A stretch of 64,000 bases of DNA from positions 124,001 to 188,000 of IMG/VR virus record IMGVR_UViG_3300025030_000041; one strand, given 5' to 3'. Shown here one piece after another: positions 8,593-63,578 of the stretch. The position numbers were made by a program, and so were the translations under genes. The notes under the pieces were generated by a model, which was given only the letters and a program-made list of their open reading frames with translations, ran no database searches and was not told where the DNA came from. The stretch's first letter is position 1. Each line of letters begins with the position of its first letter.

Positions 8593-9228
8593 ATGAAACA
8601 TATAAAACTATTTGAACAATTCATATCTGAAGAAGACACTCCTAAGCTTAGTGCTAAAGATATATTTATACCTAGAAGACTTAAAGAAAGATGGGATGAC
8701 CTGTTACTTCCTTACCTAAATAAAGGTTATACCAAAGAACAAATATTTGTAGCTAAACCCTTTGATGAACCTATTGTTATAACTAAAAATAATATAGGAG
8801 ACTTTAAAAGTATTAAAGTTATAATTGGTAATGTTAGAATACGTGGAATAACTGATTTGAGGAAGTTAGGTATAGAGGAAGTAACTGGTTTTTTTGATTG
8901 TTCTAATAATAGCTTAACTAGTCTAGAAGGAAGTCCTATTATAGTTGGAGGATTTTTCTATTGTTATAATAATAATTTAACTAGTCTTGAAGGAGCTCCT
9001 GCTACATTTAATGGATGGTTTAATTGTTCATTTAATAGCTTAACTAGTCTTGAAGGAGCTCCTGCTACATTTAATGGATGGTTTAATTGTTCATTTAATA
9101 GCTTAACTAGTCTAGAAGGAGCTCCTAAAGTAGTTAATGGCAAATTTGCTATTAATGATAATATAAAGAACTTTACAGAAAAAGAAGTAAGAGAAGTAGT
9201 TGATGTAAAAGGAAAAGTTATTGTTTAA
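8593..9228 (+). CDS. capsid-targeted LRR protein, paralogue 2 (4 repeats)
   Basis: same architecture; near-perfect 63-bp tandem duplication around 8990-9120. Confidence 0.85.
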   Translation: MKHIKLFEQFISEEDTPKLSAKDIFIPRRLKERWDDLLLPYLNKGYTKEQIFVAKPFDEPIVITKNNIGDFKSIKVIIGNVRIRGITDLRKLGIEEVTGFFDCSNNSLTSLEGSPIIVGGFFYCYNNNLTSLEGAPATFNGWFNCSFNSLTSLEGAPATFNGWFNCSFNSLTSLEGAPKVVNGKFAINDNIKNFTEKEVREVVDVKGKVIV

Positions 9229-27825: not shown

Positions 27826-28520
27826 GTATAAACTCCACCTTTTACTTTAACAGCGTTTCTCACTTCTTTTTCTGTAAATACTTTACTATTATAAGTAATA
27901 GTAAAATTTCCACCAACAATAGTAGGAGCTCCTTCTAGACTAATTAACATATTATCAGAACAATGAAAATTTCCAGTAACTGTAGTAGGAGCTCCTTCTA
28001 GACTAATTAACATATTATCAGAACAATGAAAATTTTCATTAACTGTAGTAGGAGCTCCTTCTAGACTAGTTAATTTATTATTAAAACAATAAAAATCTCC
28101 ATTAACTATAATAGGGCTTCCTTCAAGACTAGTTAATTTATTATTAAAACAATAAAAATCTCCATTAACTATAATAGGGCTTCCTTCAAGACTAGTTAGC
28201 TTATTATTAGAACAATTAAAATATCCAGTTACTTCTTCTATACCTAGTGCTCTCAGATCAGTTATTTCTTTTATTCTAACACCACCTATTATTACTTTAA
28301 TATTTTTAAAGTCTTCTATATTATCTTTAGTTATAATAATAGGTTCATTAAATGGTTTAGCAACAAGTATTTGTTCTTTGGTATAACCTTTATTTAGGTA
28401 AGGAATGAGCAAATCATCCCATCTTTCTTTAAGCCTCCTAGGTATAAATATATCTTTAGCGCTAGGCTTAGGAGTTTCTTCTTCAGATATGAATTGTTCA
28501 AAAAGTTTTATATATTTCAT
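27822..28520 (-). CDS. capsid-targeted LRR protein, paralogue 7 (5 repeats)
   Basis: family core; two pairs of near-identical 63-bp repeats. Confidence 0.85.
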   Translation of the reverse strand: MKYIKLFEQFISEEETPKPSAKDIFIPRRLKERWDDLLIPYLNKGYTKEQILVAKPFNEPIIITKDNIEDFKNIKVIIGGVRIKEITDLRALGIEEVTGYFNCSNNKLTSLEGSPIIVNGDFYCFNNKLTSLEGSPIIVNGDFYCFNNKLTSLEGAPTTVNENFHCSDNMLISLEGAPTTVTGNFHCSDNMLISLEGAPTIVGGNFTITYNSKVFTEKEVRNAVKVKGGVYT

Positions 28521-30416: not shown

Positions 30417-32066
30417 ATGGAAGTCATATCTAAAAAACTCATAATAGATAAATTAAATTCTTATAAATTTAAAGTTAAAGAATTTCAAGTAGATATTATT
30501 TATGAAATACTAGACTCATTTTTAAATGGATATACTAATGTTATATTGAATGCTCCAACTGGTGTAGGAAAAAGTGTAATTGGATTTATTGTAGCGGATA
30601 TACTAGGAGATATTGAGAAAGAAAAATTAAAATCAATAATATTAATACAAAATAATTCATTAGTCGATCAATATAAAGATATGTTTCAATATTTTTCAAA
30701 TACTGAAATTATAAAAGGTGCCGATAATTATGAATGTGAAATTTTAAATAAAAGTGCAAAGTACTGTATTTATAATATATTAAAAGAACAAAAAAGTAAA
30801 GGTAAATTATATAATTGTTATAACTGTAAATTTAAGAAGTCAAGACAAAAAATAAATGAAATACCTCATCTTATAACAAATTATCAATATTTTTTCATAT
30901 CGCGACTATATTCAGACCATTTAGAAAAACGATTAATTACAATATATGATGAGTGCCATGAAATTAATGACGCTTTTTCTAATAGTTATACAATATATAT
31001 TTCTGAGCAATTACTAAATGAATATTTAAAAGAATTACAAAGTGAAGACCCTAATATTCTAAGTAGAGCTTTAAATATATTTAATTTTGTATCAATATTA
31101 GATAAAGATTATCGTAAAACCTTAAATTTTTTATTTGAAGCATATTCGTTATTAGAAAAATATTTTCATGATAAAGCATTAGAAAGAGTTTTGAAAAATG
31201 ATTATAAAGGGTACTATAAATATAAATCTAAAGAAATAAAATATAAAGGGCTAGGTTGTAAAATTGATGATTTATTAAAATATAACTACACTCACACTGT
31301 AGATATTAATAATGTAACTAACGAGCTAACTATAAAACCTGTATTTATAAATGATTTGTTTAGTAGTATTACTTTTTCAAAATTTAATCTATTCATGAGC
31401 GCAACAATTCATCAAGATTTTATAATTAAAACTTTAAATTTAGATAAAAATGCTATAAAATTCATAGGAGCAGACTCTCCATTTAAAAAAGAAAATAAAA
31501 AAGTTATATTTTTAAATTCACATACTTTAAATTATAAGAATACTAAAGACTCGGGTGTTATACAAAAAATATCAGATATATGTAATTTAATAATTGAAAA
31601 AAAACATAAAAACGAAAAAGGTATTATCTTAACACCATCTTTTTATTTAACAAATGAAATATTTAATAATTTTATAAAATTAAATTCAATTAAAGTATTT
31701 AAACATGAAAGTGGACAAATCCTAAATTTAATCATAAATGATTTTAAGTTATATAATGGTCCAGCTTTACTAATATCTCCATCTCTATTTATAGGAATAG
31801 ACTTACCAAACGATTTTTCAAGATTTCAAATAATGATAAAGGCACCATTTCATTCTTTAGGAGATTCGCGTATGTCATATATATTAAAAAATTACCCTGA
31901 TATTTATAATATAATTACAATGTTTAAAATTATACAAGGATTTGGAAGAAGCACTAGAAATGAACATGACTACTCGACTACATACTGCCTAGATACTAAT
32001 ATCAAACGGCTATTTAATATCGCCCCACTGGAAATACAAAATCAATTTGATATAATAAATGTATAA
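30417..32066 (+). CDS. DinG/XPD-family SF2 helicase
   Basis: APTGVGKS Walker A, YDECH Walker B, MSATI motif III, GIDLP and IQGFGRSTR motif VI; Cys residues at the Fe-S position. Confidence 0.85.
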   Translation: MEVISKKLIIDKLNSYKFKVKEFQVDIIYEILDSFLNGYTNVILNAPTGVGKSVIGFIVADILGDIEKEKLKSIILIQNNSLVDQYKDMFQYFSNTEIIKGADNYECEILNKSAKYCIYNILKEQKSKGKLYNCYNCKFKKSRQKINEIPHLITNYQYFFISRLYSDHLEKRLITIYDECHEINDAFSNSYTIYISEQLLNEYLKELQSEDPNILSRALNIFNFVSILDKDYRKTLNFLFEAYSLLEKYFHDKALERVLKNDYKGYYKYKSKEIKYKGLGCKIDDLLKYNYTHTVDINNVTNELTIKPVFINDLFSSITFSKFNLFMSATIHQDFIIKTLNLDKNAIKFIGADSPFKKENKKVIFLNSHTLNYKNTKDSGVIQKISDICNLIIEKKHKNEKGIILTPSFYLTNEIFNNFIKLNSIKVFKHESGQILNLIINDFKLYNGPALLISPSLFIGIDLPNDFSRFQIMIKAPFHSLGDSRMSYILKNYPDIYNIITMFKIIQGFGRSTRNEHDYSTTYCLDTNIKRLFNIAPLEIQNQFDIINV

Positions 32067-32094
32067 AAATAAACGATTGATTATCAATTAATTA

Positions 32095-32169
32095 TATTTA
32101 GTTCAAAAATAAAGTACTTAAAAATTTTAATATATCAAACTTATTTCTTATTTTTGTATTAAATATAAC
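32095..32169 (+). promoter_or_regulatory. gene-less promoter module, copy 1 (upstream GTTA deleted)
   Basis: near-identical to 35873-35950 and 56282-56359; TATTTTTG at 32149 fits the Bacteroidota -7 box TAnnTTTG. Confidence 0.65.
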
Positions 32170-32263
32170 GGTTACAGCCTTATTTAGTGTGGGCAAAATT
32201 TTTGTTTTCTTTTTTCTCCTCACAGTTCGTAGTAATGTTGATACGAAGCACGGTTATTGCATG

Positions 32264-32471
32264 TAACGTTTTCGGGCTTGGAGATAGTTTTTAATGCGAT
32301 TTAAACAACAGAAATATGTTAGAAAAGATACAGAAAAAAGTAGAAGACCTTAGAATAAAGGTATATGCTGGACAGAACAACGAAGACACAGAAAAATACT
32401 TATATGACATTGAGCAAATGATATTCAAAGCGATGGACGAAGCATTAAAGATTTCTTCCAAGCCAGTGTTA
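32264..32471 (+). repeat. attC-like hairpin H1 (208 bp, contains start of ORF 32316)
   Basis: TAAC gttttcg GGCTTGGA ... TCCAAGCC agt GTTA. Confidence 0.75.
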
Positions 32472-32564
32472 GCAGATAGTTGCCAACATAATTGGCTGAA
32501 ATCTCATTCAAGGCATATGCTCTATTGTGGGAGCTGCGGTAAATATAAACCCGAAGGCTCTTAG
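32316..32564 (+). CDS. cassette protein crossing the GTTA junction, CxxxW...CxxC C-terminus
   Basis: junction at KPV|LADS; Zn-ribbon-like CQHNW..CGSCG. Confidence 0.65.
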   Translation: MLEKIQKKVEDLRIKVYAGQNNEDTEKYLYDIEQMIFKAMDEALKISSKPVLADSCQHNWLKSHSRHMLYCGSCGKYKPEGS

Positions 32565-32578
32565 TTGGCAATTTCTGC

Positions 32579-32658
32579 TAACGTTTTGCAGATAAGCGAA
32601 GGCACAAATAGCTTTGGCTTTGTGGGGTGGGATTTGGGCTTTTGCTTATGTGCTGTTA
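32579..32658 (+). repeat. attC-like hairpin H2 (80 bp)
   Basis: TAAC gttttgc AGATAAGCGAAGGC ... GCTTTTGCTTATGT gct GTTA. Confidence 0.85.
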
Positions 32659-32733
32659 TGTGTCTGTAAAATTTTTAATAATTATTTTTTGCGTGGGAAT
32701 TAATCAATTTAATCATTTAATAAAAACAACAAA

Positions 32734-33264
32734 ATGGAAACTTTAAACAAATTATTTACCGAACAAGATGTAGAAAATGTATCAGAAAAAATACTTTCAT
32801 CAACTAAACAAAAAATCAAAGACCAAATTGCTGATACCTTTTACGAAGAAATGTCAGATTGTTTGTTTGAACATTACAACAATTTCAAAGACGGAATGAA
32901 AGCCGATTTGCTAAAGGAAATTACAGACCAATATGTAAGCGACCCTGTAAATTATCAATTTAGAGAATTTAGAAATAAGCTATTTGCAGAGAACAAAGAT
33001 GTAATTCTAAAATCATTGACCGACCAAGCAATTTTTGAAACAGTTGAGAGTATCATTTTAGAATATACTCATAAACAACAAACTTTTGGATGGATGTGGA
33101 ATGAGGCTATCGCAAAAATTGTATTAGCAAATTGGGGTAAATTCAAAGATGATGAAAGAATACAAATGTCATTTGGTAGAGAAATTGATAATTTGAAAGG
33201 ACAAATACAAAGACTGCAAGAACGACTAAATGAAGTTTCATCAATAGTAGACGAAAATCATTAA
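32734..33264 (+). CDS. cassette hypothetical protein (helical, C-terminal coiled coil)
   Basis: 176-aa ORF inside module 32655-33315. Confidence 0.7.
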   Translation: METLNKLFTEQDVENVSEKILSSTKQKIKDQIADTFYEEMSDCLFEHYNNFKDGMKADLLKEITDQYVSDPVNYQFREFRNKLFAENKDVILKSLTDQAIFETVESIILEYTHKQQTFGWMWNEAIAKIVLANWGKFKDDERIQMSFGREIDNLKGQIQRLQERLNEVSSIVDENH

Positions 33265-33311
33265 ATCATTTGTGCGGTGGGAAAAATAATTATTAAAAAT
33301 TTTATTGCACA

Positions 33312-33401
33312 TAACGGTTGGGGGTTTGCGATAGTGCCGCTTACCACAAATTCCAATTTCAGCACTAAACTTCATAGCGGCATTTTGCAAACCCTGTGTT
33401 A
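33312..33401 (+). repeat. attC-like hairpin H3 (90 bp)
   Basis: TAAC ggttgg GGGTTTGCGATAGTGCCGCT ... AGCGGCATTTTGCAAACCC tgt GTTA. Confidence 0.85.
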
Positions 33402-33448
33402 TATGAAGTTTTATTTTTTGAAGGGCGGGCAACAAACAAATTATTAAA

Positions 33449-33718
33449 ATGGAAAAATTAACATCAATCAGATTGCAGCCAATGATTAACATCAATAAAC
33501 CCAATATGGATTTGTGGTGTCCGACATTAAATTTTGGAAGAAAGAAAGCAGGTAAATTCAAATTTCCAATAGTATTTAAAAGTATTAAACCTGCTGAAAA
33601 ACTTTACGATGAACTCCAAAATTTAATTGGCAAATCATTGGACGAAGTGAAAGCTGCATCTGAACCGCTTTATGATAAATACAAGAAGTACGATTATCGG
33701 GTGGGTGGTAAAAAATAA
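33449..33718 (+). CDS. cassette hypothetical protein
   Basis: 89-aa ORF in module 33398-33731. Confidence 0.65.
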   Translation: MEKLTSIRLQPMININKPNMDLWCPTLNFGRKKAGKFKFPIVFKSIKPAEKLYDELQNLIGKSLDEVKAASEPLYDKYKKYDYRVGGKK

Positions 33719-33727
33719 AATTTCCTA

Positions 33728-33841
33728 TAACGGTTTGGTATAAACGCAGTGTTTAACTAAACTTAATTTGAAATACAAAACTTAAAATTATGATAAAGAC
33801 ATTGATTGAAAAACTGGAAACATTACGTTTATACTTTGTTA
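33728..33841 (+). repeat. attC-like hairpin H4 (114 bp, contains start of ORF 33790)
   Basis: TAAC ggtttg GTATAAACGCAGTGTTT ... AAACATTACGTTTATAC ttt GTTA. Confidence 0.85.
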
Positions 33842-33996
33842 GTAAACGCTGTTTTAAAGTAACTTATAAAAGTAAATTGAATGGTAATATAGGAACAATT
33901 GGATATTATGGTAAATCAATTGATGGTGTTAAGAAAAAGTTTCAAAAAGAATTTGAAAATTCAATTATTTTAGACGTTTCTTACAATGTTTACTAA
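33790..33996 (+). CDS. cassette protein crossing the GTTA junction
   Basis: LRLYFV|SKR; stop codon is the TAA of the next TAAC. Confidence 0.65.
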   Translation: MIKTLIEKLETLRLYFVSKRCFKVTYKSKLNGNIGTIGYYGKSIDGVKKKFQKEFENSIILDVSYNVY

Positions 33997-34365
33997 CGTT
34001 ATCGGGCTTGGCGAAGGGCGATTATTAACCGAGAATGTTACTACGAAGAACTAAACAAAAATTTAATAAATAAAAAAAGCGATGGAAATAGATGTAAAAA
34101 AACTGATGCCAGAAGTAACAGATAATCATTTTGAAACGATAGACTTGTTACTTAAAGCAAACCAAGAAATAATTGAAGCATTACATATTATGCAATCCAG
34201 CATTGACAATTGGGATGATGCAGAATGTATGCAAATCAATAAAGACAGAATGATAAAATACTTTAATAGATTTAGTAAGGAGGTGTAGGCTTTTTATTTA
34301 TTAAATTTTTGAACCGAAATGATAATACGAAGCGATAAACTAAGCCTTTTGCCAAGCCTGTGTTA
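33994..34365 (+). repeat. attC-like hairpin H5 (372 bp, encloses ORF 34082-34288)
   Basis: TAAC gttatcg GGCTTGGCGAAGGGC ... GCCTTTTGCCAAGCC tgt GTTA. Confidence 0.8.
34082..34288 (+). CDS. hypothetical protein inside hairpin loop
   Basis: 68-aa ORF with A-rich leader. Confidence 0.6.
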   Translation: MEIDVKKLMPEVTDNHFETIDLLLKANQEIIEALHIMQSSIDNWDDAECMQINKDRMIKYFNRFSKEV

Positions 34366-34404
34366 TAAGGCGAAGCGAACCGTTGGCTTTTCGCCAATGG
34401 CTTA

Positions 34405-34533
34405 TAACGGTTTGCAGGTTTATTCAGTTGCGACTTTAAAAACGAAAAATTATGATAACAGAAAAACAATACTTAAAAGCGAAAAAGTTAATTGCAGACT
34501 ACGAAAGCCAGCAATTGAATAAACATGTTGTTA
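34405..34533 (+). repeat. attC-like hairpin H6 (129 bp, contains start of ORF 34452)
   Basis: TAAC ggtttgc AGGTTTATTCAGTTGC ... GCAATTGAATAAACAT gtt GTTA. Confidence 0.85.
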
Positions 34534-34622
34534 TAAGCAGTAAGCCGACCTCAAAAAAGAAGAAGGTGATTATAGATGCAGATAAATTTTCAAAGATGTG
34601 TGATGTTATTAAACGGATATAG
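34452..34622 (+). CDS. 56-aa cassette protein crossing the GTTA junction (not in ORF track)
   Basis: own translation MITEKQYLKAKKLIADYESQQLNKHVV|ISSKPTSKKKKVIIDADKFSKMCDVIKRI. Confidence 0.6.
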   Translation: MITEKQYLKAKKLIADYESQQLNKHVVISSKPTSKKKKVIIDADKFSKMCDVIKRI

Positions 34623-34634
34623 GCTTATTGCTGC

Positions 34635-34758
34635 TAACGGCTACAAACATGCTTAGTGCCTAATTAAATAGTAATTAACAATCAAAATAGTAGAATTATG
34701 AAAATAGCAAAAATGTTCAAAACTGCACTACAACAGGCATTAAGTATGTTTGTTGTTA
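34635..34758 (+). repeat. attC-like hairpin H7 (124 bp, contains start of ORF 34698)
   Basis: TAAC ggctac AAACATGCTTAGTGCCT ... AGGCATTAAGTATGTTT gtt GTTA. Confidence 0.85.
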
Positions 34759-34958
34759 GCAACCATGTTTACTGGGTTTTCCGTAAATTCAAACGACTTG
34801 AAACAATGGAAACTGCACCTGAAACATGGTTAATTGATGTGGATTTTGCAATCCATTTTGTAGAGCCATTTAAAAGTTATAAAGAGGCAAAGAAAGCAGT
34901 TGACTTTGCAAAACATTTACAACCTTGGCAAGAGTTTGTCATCTTACATGGTTGCTAA
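34698..34958 (+). CDS. cassette protein crossing the GTTA junction
   Basis: ALSMFVV|SNH; stop codon is the TAA of the next TAAT core. Confidence 0.65.
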   Translation: MKIAKMFKTALQQALSMFVVSNHVYWVFRKFKRLETMETAPETWLIDVDFAIHFVEPFKSYKEAKKAVDFAKHLQPWQEFVILHGC

Positions 34959-35045
34959 TGGTTGAGTGTATGAGTAGTGTGGCTTTGCACATACTTTCAA
35001 CTTACAGATAAACTTATTTAGCCACATTACTTATACACTTTGTTA
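34956..35045 (+). repeat. attC-like hairpin H8 (90 bp, TAAT core)
   Basis: TAAT ggttga GTGTATGAGTAGTGTGGCT ... AGCCACATTACTTATACAC ttt GTTA. Confidence 0.85.
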
Positions 35046-35067
35046 TAGGTATGTAAAATTTACGGAT

Positions 35068-35292
35068 ATGAAATTTATAAAAAAACAATTACTTAGAAGT
35101 ATAAACTTTGTTAAACGCTATTGGGAATTTATCGTTGTAGAATTTGCCGAAGATTTGGATTTAACTTGGTTTGGTAAATGGTTTTTAAGAACAATGATGT
35201 TTGGTTTATTTATGTGTTATATTCCAATAGTAATTGTTTTTATGCCACTATGGTTAATTATATTCAAATACGATGAAAGTTTAGGAATGTAG
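35068..35292 (+). CDS. cassette membrane protein (one TM)
   Basis: hydrophobic MMFGLFMCYIPIVIVFMPLWLIIF. Confidence 0.6.
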   Translation: MKFIKKQLLRSINFVKRYWEFIVVEFAEDLDLTWFGKWFLRTMMFGLFMCYIPIVIVFMPLWLIIFKYDESLGM

Positions 35293-35312
35293 GTAGTAAA
35301 TTTTATTACCTA

Positions 35313-35400
35313 TAACATTTAGGTGTATGAGAAGGTTTGCTTAGATGAACTTTCAAATTACCGACAATACTTATAGCAAACTTTCTTATACACCTTGTTA
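35313..35400 (+). repeat. attC-like hairpin H9 (88 bp; second copy at 55317)
   Basis: TAAC atttag GTGTATGAGAAGGTTTGCT ... AGCAAACTTTCTTATACAC ctt GTTA. Confidence 0.85.
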
Positions 35401-35460
35401 TAACCAGTACGATAAAATTAGTAGAAACTTAAATTGAAACATAAATAAAATTTTTTAAAT

Positions 35461-35781
35461 ATGAACGAATACAAATTAAAATTATTGGATTACATCTCAA
35501 AAAATTATGAGAATGTGGTAAAATCAGCACAAGGTGGTGAATATATTGAAATAGATTTAATACCAAACAGCCACGATGGATTACACGATTTACCCGAAAT
35601 TTTGGAATGTTGTGAAAAAAACGGAATTGATGTATATATGTTTTTACGTAGTTATCCAATGGATATTGGTGATGGTATTAGAATGGGAAGATATATGTAT
35701 TATATGCAAAAAACCACCAAGGCAATACTGGATGATTTAAAAAATTTTAACACAGAAACTCAAAACGAAGAACAAAAGTAA
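35461..35781 (+). CDS. cassette hypothetical protein
   Basis: 106-aa ORF in module 35397-35794. Confidence 0.65.
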   Translation: MNEYKLKLLDYISKNYENVVKSAQGGEYIEIDLIPNSHDGLHDLPEILECCEKNGIDVYMFLRSYPMDIGDGIRMGRYMYYMQKTTKAILDDLKNFNTETQNEEQK

Positions 35782-35790
35782 TATTGGTTA

Positions 35791-35876
35791 TAACGTTCTG
35801 TAAATATGATTAGTTGAAGAGTACTGTCATTTATAATTTAGTAGATTGATTATCAATTAATTATATTTACTTGTTA
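35791..35876 (+). repeat. attC-like hairpin H10 (86 bp; copies at 56199 and partial at 32075)
   Basis: TAAC gttct GTAAATATGATTAGTTGA ... TCAATTAATTATATTTAC tt GTTA. Confidence 0.85.
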
Positions 35877-35950
35877 TATTTAGTTCAAAAATAAAGTACT
35901 AAACGTGTTAATATATCAAAAATATTTCTTATTTTTGTATTAAATATAAC
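35873..35950 (+). promoter_or_regulatory. gene-less promoter module, copy 2
   Basis: GTTATATTTAGTTCAAAAATAA...TTATTTTTGTATTAAATATAAC; TAnnTTTG at 35930. Confidence 0.7.
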
Positions 35951-36070
35951 GGTTGAGAATATAAGTAGTAACCGATTTGAAACAAAAATGTTAAATTAAC
36001 GTATAATGATATTAAAAGGTAGTAACTTAAATAAACCACATAACTCGGTTATTACTTATATTCTTTGTTA
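35947..36070 (+). repeat. attC-like hairpin H11 (124 bp)
   Basis: TAAC ggttga GAATATAAGTAGTAACCGA ... TCGGTTATTACTTATATTC ttt GTTA. Confidence 0.85.
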
Positions 36071-36097
36071 TGTGTATGTAAAAATAAATTTATACCA

Positions 36098-36373
36098 ATG
36101 AAAAAAGAAATTAAAATAGGTGACAAGACGTTTGAATTTGAGAGTCCAAACATCTTAGATAAATCAACAACAGATATGATGAATGACTGGTGTAGATTAG
36201 TAGAACAACAAAAGAGTGATGAAGATGTTTGGACGGTGATACCTGAACTACCAGAATACAAATTCAAAAATCTTAAAATAGAGAGTAGTCCGTTTGAAAC
36301 AACAGAAGAAACTACTGAAATGACAGTAACTTTTAAGTATGATGATTTTGAATTTGATGATAAAAACTCATAA
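36098..36373 (+). CDS. cassette acidic hypothetical protein
   Basis: ATG at 36098 in module 36067-36395. Confidence 0.65.
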   Translation: MKKEIKIGDKTFEFESPNILDKSTTDMMNDWCRLVEQQKSDEDVWTVIPELPEYKFKNLKIESSPFETTEETTEMTVTFKYDDFEFDDKNS

Positions 36374-36391
36374 ATTTATTTTTATTACACA

Positions 36392-36474
36392 TAACGGTTG
36401 AGGGTTTATGCAGTTAAATTTTTACCAATAAAAAATAGAAATGAAAAAATTTTATTGCATTAAACCCTGTGTTA
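36392..36474 (+). repeat. attC-like hairpin H12 (83 bp)
   Basis: TAAC ggttga GGGTTTATGCAGTTAAATTTTT ... AAAAATTTTATTGCATTAAACCC tgt GTTA. Confidence 0.85.
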
Positions 36475-36552
36475 GCCGTCTGTATTTTTTAAACATTATT
36501 TTTTTAGGGAGGCATTTAATTAATCAATTTAATCATTAATAAAAACAAAAAA

Positions 36553-37110
36553 ATGGAACAAGTAAAAAAAGCATACGAAGAAATATTCAAAGCGTTAAAG
36601 AAACACAAGGACATTTGCGTTTTTGATGTAGAAGATTTGGAAAGAAAATCAAAAGTTCATCTTTTCGGGCTTACATTAAAAGAGGAATATGGCTTAAACA
36701 TAGACCCGAAGCAAGTTCAGGCGGTAAACTATTTTAAACCATCAGACCATACTTGGATTGGATGGTATGGCGAAAAGCATAATCGAACAATAAGCTGGAG
36801 CGTTGATGGCAGACAGCCCGAAGATGAACTTTTATTGCAAATCGGATTTCCAACAGGGGCTTATATTTTTGGCGAAGATTATGCAACCGATTTCTTTCAA
36901 AAGTTTTGGTTGGAATTGAAAACATACAAGCCCGATTATATTGATGAAGCGAACTGTTGCTTGTATTGGAACATCAAAAACGCAAAAGAGATTTTCAATT
37001 CATATAACGCTTTGCTAAAAAAATATTACGAACTAAATAAAGAGGATGCGAAACAAAGACTAATTGATAAAATGAAAAAGGAATTGGAGCAGTTAGAAAA
37101 ATCATCTTAA
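36553..37110 (+). CDS. cassette hypothetical protein
   Basis: 185-aa ORF in module 36471-37159; ISWSVDGRQP, FPTGAYIFG motifs. Confidence 0.7.
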   Translation: MEQVKKAYEEIFKALKKHKDICVFDVEDLERKSKVHLFGLTLKEEYGLNIDPKQVQAVNYFKPSDHTWIGWYGEKHNRTISWSVDGRQPEDELLLQIGFPTGAYIFGEDYATDFFQKFWLELKTYKPDYIDEANCCLYWNIKNAKEIFNSYNALLKKYYELNKEDAKQRLIDKMKKELEQLEKSS

Positions 37111-37283
37111 TCATTGGAGCGTTGGCAAAAAATAATGTTTAAAAAATATTGCGGCTAACTATTATATATATACAAGTATGCTTAATATATTGAATATGAA
37201 TACTAAATTCGATTGCATTATCAGACAATTTAAAAAAACTCAGATAACCCCTTAATACACATCAAATAAAACAATTTAAACTT

Positions 37284-55598: not shown

Positions 55599-55722
55599 TA
55601 ACAGTTGGGGGTATATGTAGTGCGAGATTTTAAACACTAAACTTGACTTAACCCCAGAACTTAATTAGAAGTAGAAATGTTGAATAAATCGCTGAACCTC
55701 ACATTACATATACACCTTGTTA
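55599..55722 (+). repeat. attC-like hairpin H13 (124 bp)
   Basis: TAAC agttg GGGGTATATGTAGTGCGAG ... CTCACATTACATATACACC tt GTTA. Confidence 0.85.
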
Positions 55723-62945: not shown

Positions 62946-63578
62946 TCAAAAATAAACTTCTCCTTTTATATCAACTATGCCTCTTATTTCTTCTTCTGTA
63001 AATTTCTTCACATTATCGATAATCATAAAATCTCCTTTAACTATCTTAGGAGCTCCTTCTATACTAGTTATAATATTATAAGAACACTTAAAATCTCCAT
63101 TAACTATCGTAGGAGCTCCTACTAGACTAGTTATATCATTAGTAGAACAACTAAAATCTCCATTAGATATAGTAGGGCCGCCTTCTAGACTAGTTAACTT
63201 ATTATGAAAACAACTAAAATCTCCATTAGATATAGTAGGAGATCCTTTTAAACTAGTTAATCCATTAAATGAACAATTAAACTCTCCAGATACTTCTTCT
63301 AAATTTAATTCTTTTAAAATATCACCATTTATTCTAACACCACCTATTATTACTTTAATATCCTTAAATTCTTTTACATTAGTGTTATTTATACTAATAA
63401 ATTCATTAAAATCTTTAGATACATATATTTGGTCTTTAGTATACCCTTTATTTAGGTATGGAATAAGTAAGTCATCCCATCTTTCTTTAAGTCTTCTTGG
63501 TATAAATATATCTTTAGCACTAAGTTTAGGAGCTTCTTCTTTGAGTATAAATTGTTCAAATAGTTTTATATGTTTCAT
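62946..63578 (-). CDS. capsid-targeted LRR protein, paralogue 11 (4 repeats)
   Basis: family core; middle block shared with paralogue 4. Confidence 0.85.
   Translation of the reverse strand: MKHIKLFEQFILKEEAPKLSAKDIFIPRRLKERWDDLLIPYLNKGYTKDQIYVSKDFNEFISINNTNVKEFKDIKVIIGGVRINGDILKELNLEEVSGEFNCSFNGLTSLKGSPTISNGDFSCFHNKLTSLEGGPTISNGDFSCSTNDITSLVGAPTIVNGDFKCSYNIITSIEGAPKIVKGDFMIIDNVKKFTEEEIRGIVDIKGEVYF

What the first reader, a model, noticed from the sequence alone, without database searches (positions are those of the whole stretch)
32468..37159. Modules carry extended self-complementary ends (8-35 bp) with a conserved G at +11/+12
Seen: the start of each module is complementary to its own end well beyond a 7-bp core. 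Examples: GTTAGCCGTCTGTATTTTTTAAACATTATTTTTT vs AAAAAATAATGTTTAAAAAATATTGCGGCTAAC (36471/37159), and about 35 bp for 32655/33315. Most start arms have G at position 11 (wobble) or 12 (with a 1-nt bulge). Inference: in a circular intermediate these arms would extend the hairpin stem outward and form a second protein-binding box with an extrahelical base. Their persistence implies modules move or are selected as intact units.
Basis: partly seen in the sequence, partly recalled or inferred. Interest (0 to 1): 0.65.

Follow-up and report, generated by a model that had tools for sequence, protein, structure and literature searches.

The report
Self-pairing ends of phage gene cassettes
In this large phage, each small mobile gene cassette has a start and an end that pair with each other for 10-35 bases around one fixed G-T mismatch. 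This looks like the outer arm of an integron-type folded-DNA recombination site, used by a Xer-like recombinase that lacks the domain integron integrases are thought to need.

Summary
In the window, 12 modules (GTTA...TAAC, 32468-37159) pair start-to-own-end far better than start-to-other-end (mean score 13.6 vs 2.4; permutation p<1e-5). The G is at +11 or +12 in 11 of 12, and its partner T at -11 is present in 12 of 12.

The region is an integron-like cassette array in a 246-kb phage from groundwater metagenomes. The mobile unit is TAA|C-hairpin-GTTA-module-TAA. The array ends at a conserved TAAC|TATTATATATA junction that elsewhere sits just upstream of a Xer-like tyrosine recombinase lacking the IntI insertion.

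In 285 non-redundant modules from about 70 related phage contigs, delimited only by their flanking hairpins, the rule holds:
- about 10 bp of cassette-specific pairing;
- an obligate G.T (G in 282/285, T in 283/285);
- at least 4 more bp in 72%, at least 10 more in 23%.

Neighbouring cassettes do not pair (2.4 of 6 matches, equal to random), so the full stem exists only when a cassette's own ends meet. Bacteroidota chromosomal arrays follow the same rule with ORFs on the opposite strand, which argues against an mRNA structure.

Class 1 integron cassettes also pair 8-12 bp, so the principle is integron-like. The regular G.T, the long arms and the recombinase lacking the I2 insertion are new as far as I could find. 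Protein binding and recombination are untested.

The parts
32075..32267 (+). Start of the array. It holds a copy of the promoter-like ORF-less repeat that ends in ATATAAC (32167-32170) and a degenerate site.
32264..32471 (+). Hairpin H0 (TAAC-GTTTTCG-GGCTTGG ... CCAAGCC-AGT-GTTA). Its loop holds the start of ORF 32316-32564.
32468..32582 (+). Module M1. Arms are 9 bp, then a bulge with G at +12, then 9 bp.
32579..32658 (+). Hairpin H1
32655..33315 (+). Module M2 (ORF 32734-33264). Arms are 8 bp, then a TCTG/CAA internal loop with G at +12, then 23 perfect bp.
   Evidence: I4
33312..33401 (+). Hairpin H2 (TAAC-GGTTG-stem ... stem-TGT-GTTA)
33398..33731 (+). Module M3 (ORF 33449-33718). The arm is 22 nt at 91% complementarity, with G.T at +11.
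   Evidence: I20
33728..33841 (+). Hairpin H3. The start of ORF 33790-33996 lies in its loop.
33838..33997 (+). Module M4. 10 bp, then G.T at +11.
33994..34365 (+). Hairpin H4 (GGCTTGGCGAAGG / CCTTTTGCCAAGCC). A nested insert sits in its loop.
34028..34341 (+). Nested element in the H4 loop: ORF 34082-34288 flanked by 21-bp perfect inverted repeats (34056-34076 and 34291-34311). Contigs of an unrelated sediment metagenome lack it.
   Evidence: I11; joints 34027>34342 and 34029>34341
34362..34408 (+). Module M6, 47 nt and ORF-less. 8 bp, with G at +11.
34405..34638 (+). Whole cassette: hairpin H6 (34405-34533) plus module M7 (34530-34638, ORF 34452-34622). It has two further copies in the genome, at 75296-75532 (99%) and 234808-234532 (93%).
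34635..34758 (+). Hairpin H7. The start of ORF 34698-34958 lies in its loop.
34755..34959 (+). Module M8, the exception. 13 bp pair with no G.T, and the core after it is TAAT.
34956..35045 (+). Hairpin H8
35042..35316 (+). Module M9 (ORF 35068-35292). 10 bp, then TG/A with G at +12, then 10 bp.
35313..35400 (+). Hairpin H9
35397..35794 (+). Module M10 (ORF 35461-35781). 10 bp, then G.T at +11, then 2 bp.
35791..35876 (+). Hairpin H10
35873..35950 (+). Module M11, ORF-less. It is the promoter-like repeat, present about 17 times in the genome. 10 bp, then G.T at +11, then 9 bp.
   Evidence: I16
35947..36070 (+). Hairpin H11
36067..36395 (+). Module M12 (ORF 36065/36089-36373). 10 bp, then TG/A with G at +12, then 15 bp.
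36392..36474 (+). Hairpin H12
36471..37159 (+). Module M13 (ORF 36553-37110). 8 bp, then TCTG/CAA with G at +12, then 22 perfect bp.
   Evidence: I8
37156..37247 (+). attI-like junction TAAC|TATTATATATATACAAG followed by a remnant of the first ~29 codons of the recombinase gene. The intact copy is at genome 77290-78156.

Best explanation
The arms are the outer half of an integron-type (attC-like) recombination site that works as folded single-stranded DNA.

On the strand read 5'-TAAC...GTTA-3' (the coding strand in this phage), a cassette is C, a 5-nt spacer, a stem-loop, a 1-2-nt spacer, GTTA, the start arm, the cargo, the end arm, then TAA.

The arm next to the crossover needs about 10 bp of duplex. 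Only the 4-bp core is common to all cassettes. The next 6 bp are specific to each cassette and are supplied by its own two ends. They are closed by a fixed A-T / G.T / T-A step one helical turn from the core, usually followed by 4 or more further pairs.

The complete site therefore exists only when a cassette's own ends meet. That happens in the excised circle, or in the array with the cargo looped out, which would also bring the two crossover points together.

A Xer-like tyrosine recombinase, encoded next to a conserved TAAC|TATTATATATA entry site, is inferred to act on this structure.

Shown here: the pairing, its cassette specificity, the G.T rule, its strand asymmetry, the cassette boundaries, and the linkage to the recombinase.

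Inferred only: folding in vivo, binding, which base is flipped out, the cleavage point inside TAAC, and any role of the long extensions.
For: 1. Own against non-own pairing. In the window the scores are 13.6 against 2.4, p<1e-5. In 285 independent modules they are 8.7 against 1.2.

2. Covariation. Positions 5-10 are nearly free in sequence yet match in 5.08 of 6 for own pairs, against 2.35 for random pairs and 2.42 for adjacent cassettes. M2 and M13 carry unrelated ORFs in homologous frames whose arm differences, including a 2-nt indel, are all compensated.

3. Invariant G(+11/+12) opposite T(-11): 282 and 283 of 285. In the window, 11/12 and 12/12.

4. Strand asymmetry. The junction folds better on the TAAC...GTTA strand in 97% of cases, by 4.1 kcal/mol on average. 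Hairpin minimum-energy folds hold 838 G.T pairs on that strand against 256 on the complement.

5. The circular junction is 7 kcal/mol more stable than the array context and forms one rod.

6. Unit and boundaries. Duplicated or rearranged blocks run TAAC to TAAC, and the same module can sit next to the entry site or inside an array. In an independent sample, contigs identical to the window end at 33316, 34638 and 35951.

7. Linkage to the recombinase. Of 432 hairpins, 423 are co-oriented with it and nearly all lie upstream of it. The TAAC|TAT(A)TTATATAT junction is conserved 40-60 nt before its start codon across contigs whose recombinases are only 50-57% identical to the window phage's.

8. 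Bacteroidota chromosomal arrays keep the same arm rule and polarity, although their ORFs lie on the other strand.

9. Precedent from established knowledge. IntI recombines folded attC bottom strands. XerCD recombines the folded single-stranded attP of CTX phage.
Against: - No experiment or read-level evidence for circles or single-strand folding. Only contigs could be laid, and no circular junction was seen.
- The recombinase lacks the I2 insertion that the integron field holds to be the basis of attC processing (PMC7790495).
- In array context the arm next to the crossover is only the 4-bp core plus chance matches. Excision therefore needs either a weak site or the untested looped-out fold.
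- In the phage the folding strand is also the mRNA strand, so an added RNA role cannot be excluded.
- The nested element at 34028-34341 has 21-bp perfect arms without an adjacent GTTA/TAAC core. Long inverted repeats around ORFs can thus exist apart from the core.
- Arm strength does not fall with distance from the recombinase gene (rho 0.09). This fits ongoing selection but equally fits fast array turnover.
Confidence: 0.65

Rival explanations
1. RNA-level element. The arms pair the 5' and 3' ends of each cassette's mRNA, and the hairpins are RNA stem-loops that stabilise, process (RNase III-type) or terminate transcripts. The G.T would then be an ordinary G.U wobble.
For: In the phage arrays the better-folding strand is the coding strand in 261 of 276 modules. 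G.U pairs are tolerated in RNA. Many arms abut or include the start and stop codons. The nested element has long arms without a core.
Against: Bacteroidota chromosomal arrays keep the same G.T polarity relative to TAAC...GTTA and the recombinase, but their ORFs are on the opposite strand in 18/18. There the mRNA would carry C.A mismatches. Cassette boundaries, the entry-site junction and the recombinase linkage are DNA-level features. The hairpins lack the T-run of intrinsic terminators.
Confidence: 0.1
2. Passive footprint. The arms are remnants of how cassettes are made, for example an ORF placed into a pre-existing palindromic frame or hairpin loop. They persist through recent origin and copying rather than through function.
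For: M2 and M13 share leader and arms but carry unrelated ORFs. Contigs from another metagenome keep the arms of M9 while replacing its ORF (joint 35067>35293). A cassette sits inside the loop of H4.
Against: All differences between the M2 and M13 arms are compensated. The 6 variable bp differ among nearly all of 285 modules yet stay complementary. The G.T is never 'repaired' to a Watson-Crick pair: the ungapped match at +11 is 5%. The rule is shared by phage arrays and by Bacteroidota chromosomal arrays whose recombinases are 41-57% identical to the window phage's.
Confidence: 0.12
3. Terminal inverted repeats of small transposon- or MITE-like elements, recognised as double-stranded DNA by a transposase or by the recombinase.
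For: Each module is bounded by inverted repeats that begin with a shared GTTA/TAAC.
Against: The repeats are specific to each cassette, so no protein could read them all (non-own score 1.2). There are no target-site duplications and no transposase. Boundaries of moved blocks include the upstream hairpin and lie in the shared core. The two ends are systematically asymmetric at +11 (G against A), so they are not true inverted repeats there.
Confidence: 0.03

Closest known systems
Integron cassettes and attC sites recombined by IntI (classes 1-3, Vibrio superintegron)
   Same: - Arrays of single-ORF cassettes separated by imperfect palindromes bounded by ...AAC and GTT....
- The crossover lies in the conserved core, and the cassette carries one site.
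- The entry site sits next to the integrase gene.
- The cassette's first bases pair with its own inverse core once it is circular.
- One strand folds preferentially.
- Ten class 1 cassettes that I checked pair for 8-12 bp from GTT, not just 7.
   Different: - The recombinase is Xer-like and lacks the IntI-specific I2 insertion.
- The spacer between the two stems is asymmetric, 5 nt against 1-2 nt.
- A fixed G.T sits 10 bp outside the core, in place of or besides L-box extrahelical bases.
- About a quarter of the arms run to 20-35 bp.
- In phages the ORFs lie on the folding strand, and the array is upstream of and co-directional with the recombinase gene.
- IntegronFinder 2.0 reports almost no integrons in Bacteroidetes (PMC9024848).
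CTX-phage attP(+) hairpin recombined by XerCD (and other IMEX elements)
   Same: An unmodified Xer-type recombinase acts on a folded single strand that mimics a duplex site with an unpaired centre (established knowledge).
   Different: There it is one integration site that copies a fixed dif sequence, using host enzymes and no cassettes. Here the arm sequences are free, and only the structure, the TAAC/GTTA core and the G.T are kept.
attC clusters without an integrase (CALINs) reported in phage genomes (Qi et al. 2023, PMC9892861)
   Same: attC-type sites and cassette-like ORFs in virulent phages, including a Polaribacter phage.
   Different: Those were found with classical attC models, in clusters of at least two predicted attC sites. 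No dedicated phage recombinase, entry site or arm rule was described.
PeSL promoter/stem-loop cassettes of T4-type phages (PMC2839356, PMC4122927)
   Same: Small accessory ORFs in hyperplastic regions of large phages, flanked by repeated regulatory stem-loop motifs and shuffled as modules.
   Different: PeSLs are promoter-plus-terminator motifs that shuffle modules through recombination between the repeated motifs (my recollection of those papers; here I saw only their titles and the start of their abstracts). I know of no dedicated recombinase, TAAC/GTTA core, entry site or cassette-specific self-complementary ends in them.
pdif modules of Acinetobacter plasmids (Xer-dependent; PMC7399989)
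   Same: Discrete gene modules bounded by inverted Xer-type sites and arranged in arrays.
   Different: pdif sites are conserved 28-bp double-stranded sequences (established knowledge). Here the flanks vary and are conserved only in complementarity.

Membership tests
Integron (IntI + attI + attC cassettes) | Integrase carries the IntI-specific additional domain (I2 helix) inside the catalytic domain | tested here: not met
   Aligned to VchIntIA (2a3v), query residues 179-204 face chain residues 179-250, so about 45 residues are missing. The alignment to XerA/XerC-like structures (4a8e, 5hxy) is collinear. TIGR02249 matches in two pieces and scores below its cut-off.
Integron (IntI + attI + attC cassettes) | Tyrosine recombinase with an intact catalytic set | tested here: met
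   PF00589 scores 132.9 bits. R135, K160/163, H221, R224, H247 and Y256 are invariant in 17 family members.
Integron (IntI + attI + attC cassettes) | Sites are imperfect palindromes with conserved AAC/GTT ends and two paired boxes split by an unpaired spacer | tested here: met
   Sites read TAAC, 5 nt, stem, loop, stem, 1-2 nt, GTTA. There are 432 such sites in related loci and 12 in the window. Classical attC covariance models could not be run.
Integron (IntI + attI + attC cassettes) | Cassette is one cargo plus one site, bounded in the core, and can circularise and re-insert at a site next to the integrase | tested here: inconclusive
   Boundaries and shuffling are shown. A conserved junction next to the recombinase is shown. 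Circles and insertion were not observed.
Integron (IntI + attI + attC cassettes) | Cargo ORFs lie antisense to the recombinogenic (bottom) strand and are read outward from the integrase-proximal end of the array | tested here: not met
   In phage arrays, ORFs are on the folding strand in 261/276 modules and the array is upstream of the recombinase gene. In the Bacteroidota chromosomal relatives, ORFs are antisense to the folding strand in 18/18 modules, and in the loci read closely (L135, L093) the array lies downstream of and co-directional with the recombinase gene.
Integron (IntI + attI + attC cassettes) | Folded single strand is the substrate; extrahelical bases set strand choice | not testable with these tools
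   Indirect support only: G.T asymmetry and an energy bias toward one strand.
Xer/dif-type sites (dif, pdif modules) | Conserved ~28-bp duplex site: two 11-bp sequence-specific arms around a 6-8-bp centre | tested here: not met
   Apart from TAAC/GTTA and the A-G-T/A-T-T step, the arm bases are free.
Xer/dif-type sites (dif, pdif modules) | Simple two-domain Xer-like recombinase | tested here: met
   Best NCBIfam and PDB matches are XerA, XerC and XerD. The protein is 271 aa with no arm-binding domain.
PeSL cassettes of T4-type phages | Each mobile ORF is flanked by a conserved early promoter plus stem-loop motif | tested here: not met
   Hairpins differ between cassettes. A promoter-like repeat occurs only as separate ORF-less modules.
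MITE/IS elements with terminal inverted repeats | Inverted repeats shared among copies, target-site duplication, cognate transposase | tested here: not met
   Arms are cassette-specific. No duplications and no transposase were found.

The most novel reading that the evidence does not exclude
These arrays may belong to a widespread sister lineage of integrons that lacks the I2 insertion, found in Bacteroidota and their large phages. In it, each cassette's own ends build the recombinase arm, and an invariant G.T one helical turn from the core replaces the extrahelical-base/I2 recognition of classical integrons. Pairing of the own ends may also pre-align the two crossover points, so that a cassette synapses with itself. 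This lineage might be a source of some clinical cassettes: blaVEB-1 follows the same 10 bp + G.T rule.
Probability: 0.4. Interest if true: 0.9.

Novelty: new variant of a known kind. Interest (0 to 1): 0.78.

Why it matters
The integron field holds that recombining folded single-stranded attC sites became possible through the I2 insertion in IntI, and it notes a lack of evolutionary intermediates (PMC7790495). Here a plain Xer-like recombinase is tied to hundreds of attC-like cassette arrays in phages and in Bacteroidota chromosomes. These arrays share a simple structural rule: 10 bp of the cassette's own pairing, a fixed G.T, then more stem.

That rule offers three things:
- a mutational handle for testing how a structure-reading recombinase chooses site and strand without I2;
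- a sequence signature for finding such arrays, which current integron finders appear to miss in Bacteroidota (PMC9024848);
- a view of how jumbo phages trade small accessory genes.

Tried and rejected
- Megablast of the region against cultured phages found no match. The closest recombinase in cultured phages is only 36% identical. No isolate is available for comparison.
- Pfam and PHROGs on ten cargo ORFs gave nothing usable.
- Genome-wide scanning by arm complementarity alone was abandoned. The reversed-sequence control scores as high as 14.5.
- Laying public runs returned only assembled contigs. They showed where contigs break and that the H4 insert is optional, but they could not show circles, strand or frequency. 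Several joints in the source sample are other genomic copies or have unknown inserts, so I did not interpret them.
- The idea that arms decay with distance from the recombinase gene was not supported (rho 0.09, p 0.12).
- The idea that neighbouring cassettes are selected to pair in array context was not supported (2.42 against 2.35 matches).
- G-rich boxes at the inner edge of the long arms, seen in M2 and M3, are not general: 11-13 of 228 modules.
- Seven literature searches found no description of this system. Subscription-only papers are not covered.
- I did not run the large protein searches, structure prediction or complex prediction. The complex tool takes no DNA, so it could not address the claim.

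Full report
**What the region is**

The window is bases 124001-188000 of a 246-kb virus record with 25% GC. Its sequence recurs in groundwater metagenomes. Around the finding lie a helicase gene (30417-32066), a GIY-YIG-type ORF, and a 942-aa protein with a weak, sub-threshold match to a phage tail-sheath domain.

Between 32.1 and 37.2 kb, about a dozen small + strand ORFs have no recognisable function. They are separated by imperfect hairpins of one design: TAAC, about 5 unpaired bases (often GGTTG), a stem, a loop, the stem's other half, 1-2 unpaired bases, then GTTA.

**Checking the observation**

Both quoted examples are correct: 8 bp, a 4x3 internal loop, then 22 or 23 perfect pairs (I8 and I4).

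I scored every start arm against the reverse complement of every end arm, beyond the shared 4-nt core.
- The 12 own pairs average 13.6. The 132 other pairs average 2.4 (maximum 12.5).
- None of 100,000 permutations reached the observed sum.

G is at +11 in six modules and at +12, after one extra base, in five. Its partner, T at -11 of the end arm, is present in all twelve. M8 is the single exception, and the core that follows it is mutated to TAAT.

**What the array is**

The genome encodes two Xer-like tyrosine recombinases. Their best matches are archaeal XerA and XerC/D. The integron-integrase model matches only in two pieces, and against VchIntIA about 45 residues, the IntI-specific insertion, are absent.

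One recombinase gene (genome 77.3 kb) is preceded by a second array. That array ends ...CCGCTAAC|TATTATATATATACAAG, 40 nt before the start codon. The window's array ends with the same junction followed by a remnant of the first ~29 codons of that gene (37156-37247). Two more such junctions lie on the other strand of the genome.

**The mobile unit**

One cassette of the window (34403-34639) has two further copies in the genome. The identity runs from one TAAC, through the hairpin and the module, to the next TAAC, with different neighbours on both sides.

The mobile unit is therefore TAA|C-hairpin-GTTA-module-TAA. Read on this strand, that is the geometry of the bottom strand of a classical integron cassette.

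**The family**

The recombinase has 217 relatives in IMG/VR contigs, and the 80 I kept are 50-59% identical to it, apart from one 100% match (L003) from a near-identical phage. In the contigs inspected, the gene is preceded by TAAC|TAT(A)TTATATAT.

A detector that uses only the hairpin design found 432 hairpins in these loci. Of these, 423 are co-oriented with the recombinase gene and almost all lie upstream of it.

Taking the stretches between consecutive hairpins gave 285 non-redundant modules whose arms played no part in their definition.
- Own score is 8.7 against 1.2 for non-own pairs.
- Positions 5-10 vary freely between cassettes but match their own partner in 69-90% of cases.
- At position 11 the start arm is G in 216 and the reverse-complemented end arm is A in 283, so this position almost never forms a Watson-Crick pair.
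- Positions 12-15 match 73-84%. From 16 on, the match falls to about 40%.
- Counting the class with an extra base, G is at +11 or +12 in 282/285.
- Beyond the G.T, 72% have at least 4 more pairs and 23% at least 10, against 9% and 0.3% for non-own pairs.

The window's 22-35-bp arms are the long tail of a general rule: 10 bp, G.T, then 4 or more bp.

**Movement of cassettes**

Between related contigs, blocks are rearranged at TAAC. The same module sits next to the entry junction in L049 and inside the array in L066.

Cassette-sized blocks 97-100% identical are shared by otherwise unrelated contigs and begin and end at, or within a few bases of, TAAC: L014/L046, L049/L078, L018/L060.

In an independent groundwater sample, contigs identical to the window stop at 33316, 34638 and 35951, at or one base past TAAC.

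**Folding**

With DNA parameters, own end arm plus hairpin plus own start arm folds into a single rod. The mean is -25.4 kcal/mol, against -18.3 when the preceding cassette's end arm is used, as in the array (269 cassettes).

Adjacent cassettes pair no better than random ones: 2.42 against 2.35 matches in positions 5-10, compared with 5.08 for own ends. The full site therefore exists only when a cassette's own ends meet.

The TAAC...GTTA strand folds better than its complement in 97% of junctions. Hairpin folds hold 838 G.T pairs on it against 256 on the complement. Short modules of the window fold with arms together and show the same bias.

**DNA or RNA?**

In the phages the better-folding strand is also the coding strand (261 of 276 modules). 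That leaves room for an RNA reading.

However, relatives of the recombinase (41-54% identical) in Bacteroidota genomes carry arrays with the same hairpin polarity, the same arm rule and a similar junction (TAAC|TTGTATATA). There the ORFs are on the opposite strand in 18/18 modules, as in classical integrons. The conserved polarity thus follows the recombination apparatus, not transcription.

**Comparison with classical integrons**

I fetched three class 1 arrays and read ten cassettes. Their own start and own inverse-core side pair for 8-12 bp from GTT. For example, blaVIM pairs for 11 bp, and aadA2, aadB and qacL for 12 bp.

Pairing beyond the textbook 7-bp core is therefore not unique to the phage system. 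The regular G.T at +11 is absent there with one exception. blaVEB-1 has 10 bp, then G.T on its bottom strand, then TTT, and its bottom strand reads TAAC-GGTTTGG like the phage sites.

**Mechanism proposed (inferred)**

The 10 bp next to the crossover form the recombinase arm, comparable to the 11-bp arm of a Xer site. Only 4 of them are fixed, so the rest must be supplied by complementarity of the cassette's own ends.

The A-T / G.T / T-A step one turn away marks the arm's outer edge and the correct strand. On the complement it would be a C.A mismatch.

The T lies at a fixed distance on the strand that carries TAA|C, and length variation is confined to the other strand. This fits a protein that measures along the cleaved strand.

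In the array, pairing of own ends with the cargo looped out would place the downstream TAA|C beside the cassette's own hairpin, whose 5' side carries the upstream TAA|C. The two exchange points would then be pre-aligned.

None of this has been tested, and the recombinase lacks I2, which the field regards as the basis of attC processing (PMC7790495).

**The long extensions**

M2 and M13 have unrelated ORFs inside homologous leaders and arms. All differences between their arms, including a 2-nt indel, are compensated, which argues for selection on pairing.

On the other hand, an element nested in the loop of hairpin H4 has 21-bp perfect arms without a core beside them. That element is absent from contigs of a sediment metagenome. 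The long AT-rich arms may therefore serve something besides the core rule.

**Prior knowledge**

attC clusters have been reported in phages using classical models (PMC9892861). PeSL modules shuffle ORFs in T4-type phages (PMC2839356). IntegronFinder 2.0 found almost nothing in Bacteroidetes (PMC9024848).

I found no description of this recombinase-array system or of the arm rule in seven full-text searches.

**Verdict**

It is a new variant of the integron kind.

Noticed in passing
window 37156-37247; genome 77290-77392: The window's array ends in a copy (91% over 103 nt) of the entry-site junction plus the first ~29 codons of the recombinase gene, but no recombinase follows. Two more TAACTATTATATATA junctions lie on the minus strand at genome 13199 and 108988.
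   Followed up: partly
window 32075-32170 and 35818-35950 (about 17 copies genome-wide): An ORF-less module of about 78 nt, with 30-60 nt of conserved sequence before it, recurs on both strands of the genome. Its end arm holds TATTTTTG, which fits the Bacteroidota -7 promoter motif TAnnTTTG (from memory). It may be a promoter cassette. The copy at 32092 has lost its GTTA through a 13-bp deletion between short repeats.
   Followed up: no
window 34028-34341 inside hairpin 33994-34365: A small ORF with 21-bp perfect inverted repeats sits in the loop of a hairpin, bounded by TAAC-like words. Contigs of an unrelated sediment metagenome carry the hairpin without it.
   Followed up: partly
window 32655-32740 vs 36471-36560: M2 and M13 share a leader of about 85 nt (78% identical) and related arms, but their ORFs are unrelated. 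In another metagenome the arms of M9 flank a different insert (joint 35067>35293). Cassette 'frames' seem to be reused for different cargo.
   Followed up: partly
L164 7058-8140 (blaVEB-1 cassette of a class 1 integron, Pseudomonas plasmid): This clinical cassette follows the phage/Bacteroidota rule: 10 bp, G.T at +11 on the bottom strand, then TTT, with the bottom strand reading TAAC-GGTTTGG. Nine other class 1 cassettes do not. This may hint at the cassette's origin, but it is a single case.
   Followed up: no
L083-L162, e.g. L135 8900-11000, L093 8900-12700: Flavobacterium and other Bacteroidota chromosomes carry arrays of the same hairpins downstream of a homologous recombinase lacking the I2 insertion. 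Cassettes there are larger (0.4-2.9 kb), and the arrangement is recombinase gene, entry site, then co-directional cassettes.
   Followed up: partly
window 34755-34959: M8 is the only window module without the G.T, and the core after it is TAAT instead of TAAC. It may be a cassette that can no longer move.
   Followed up: no
window 8978-9136, 27977-28072 (-), 55599-55722, 63038-63133 (-): Further hairpins of the same design lie elsewhere in the window. Others lie elsewhere in the genome (46-50 kb, 63-68 kb, 110 kb, 235 kb), so cassettes are scattered over several arrays.
   Followed up: no
genome 77341-78156 and 233.7-234.2 kb (L001, L002): There are two paralogous recombinases (51% identical), each with hairpins upstream. 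Whether they act together like XerC/XerD is unknown.
   Followed up: no
window 32690-32700, 33270-33281, 33420-33432, 33693-33705: G-rich boxes (GCGTGGG, GCGGTGGG, GGGCGGG, GGGTGGGTGG) lie at the inner edge of the long arms of M2 and M3, as direct rather than inverted repeats. They are rare in the wider set (11-13 of 228 modules).
   Followed up: yes
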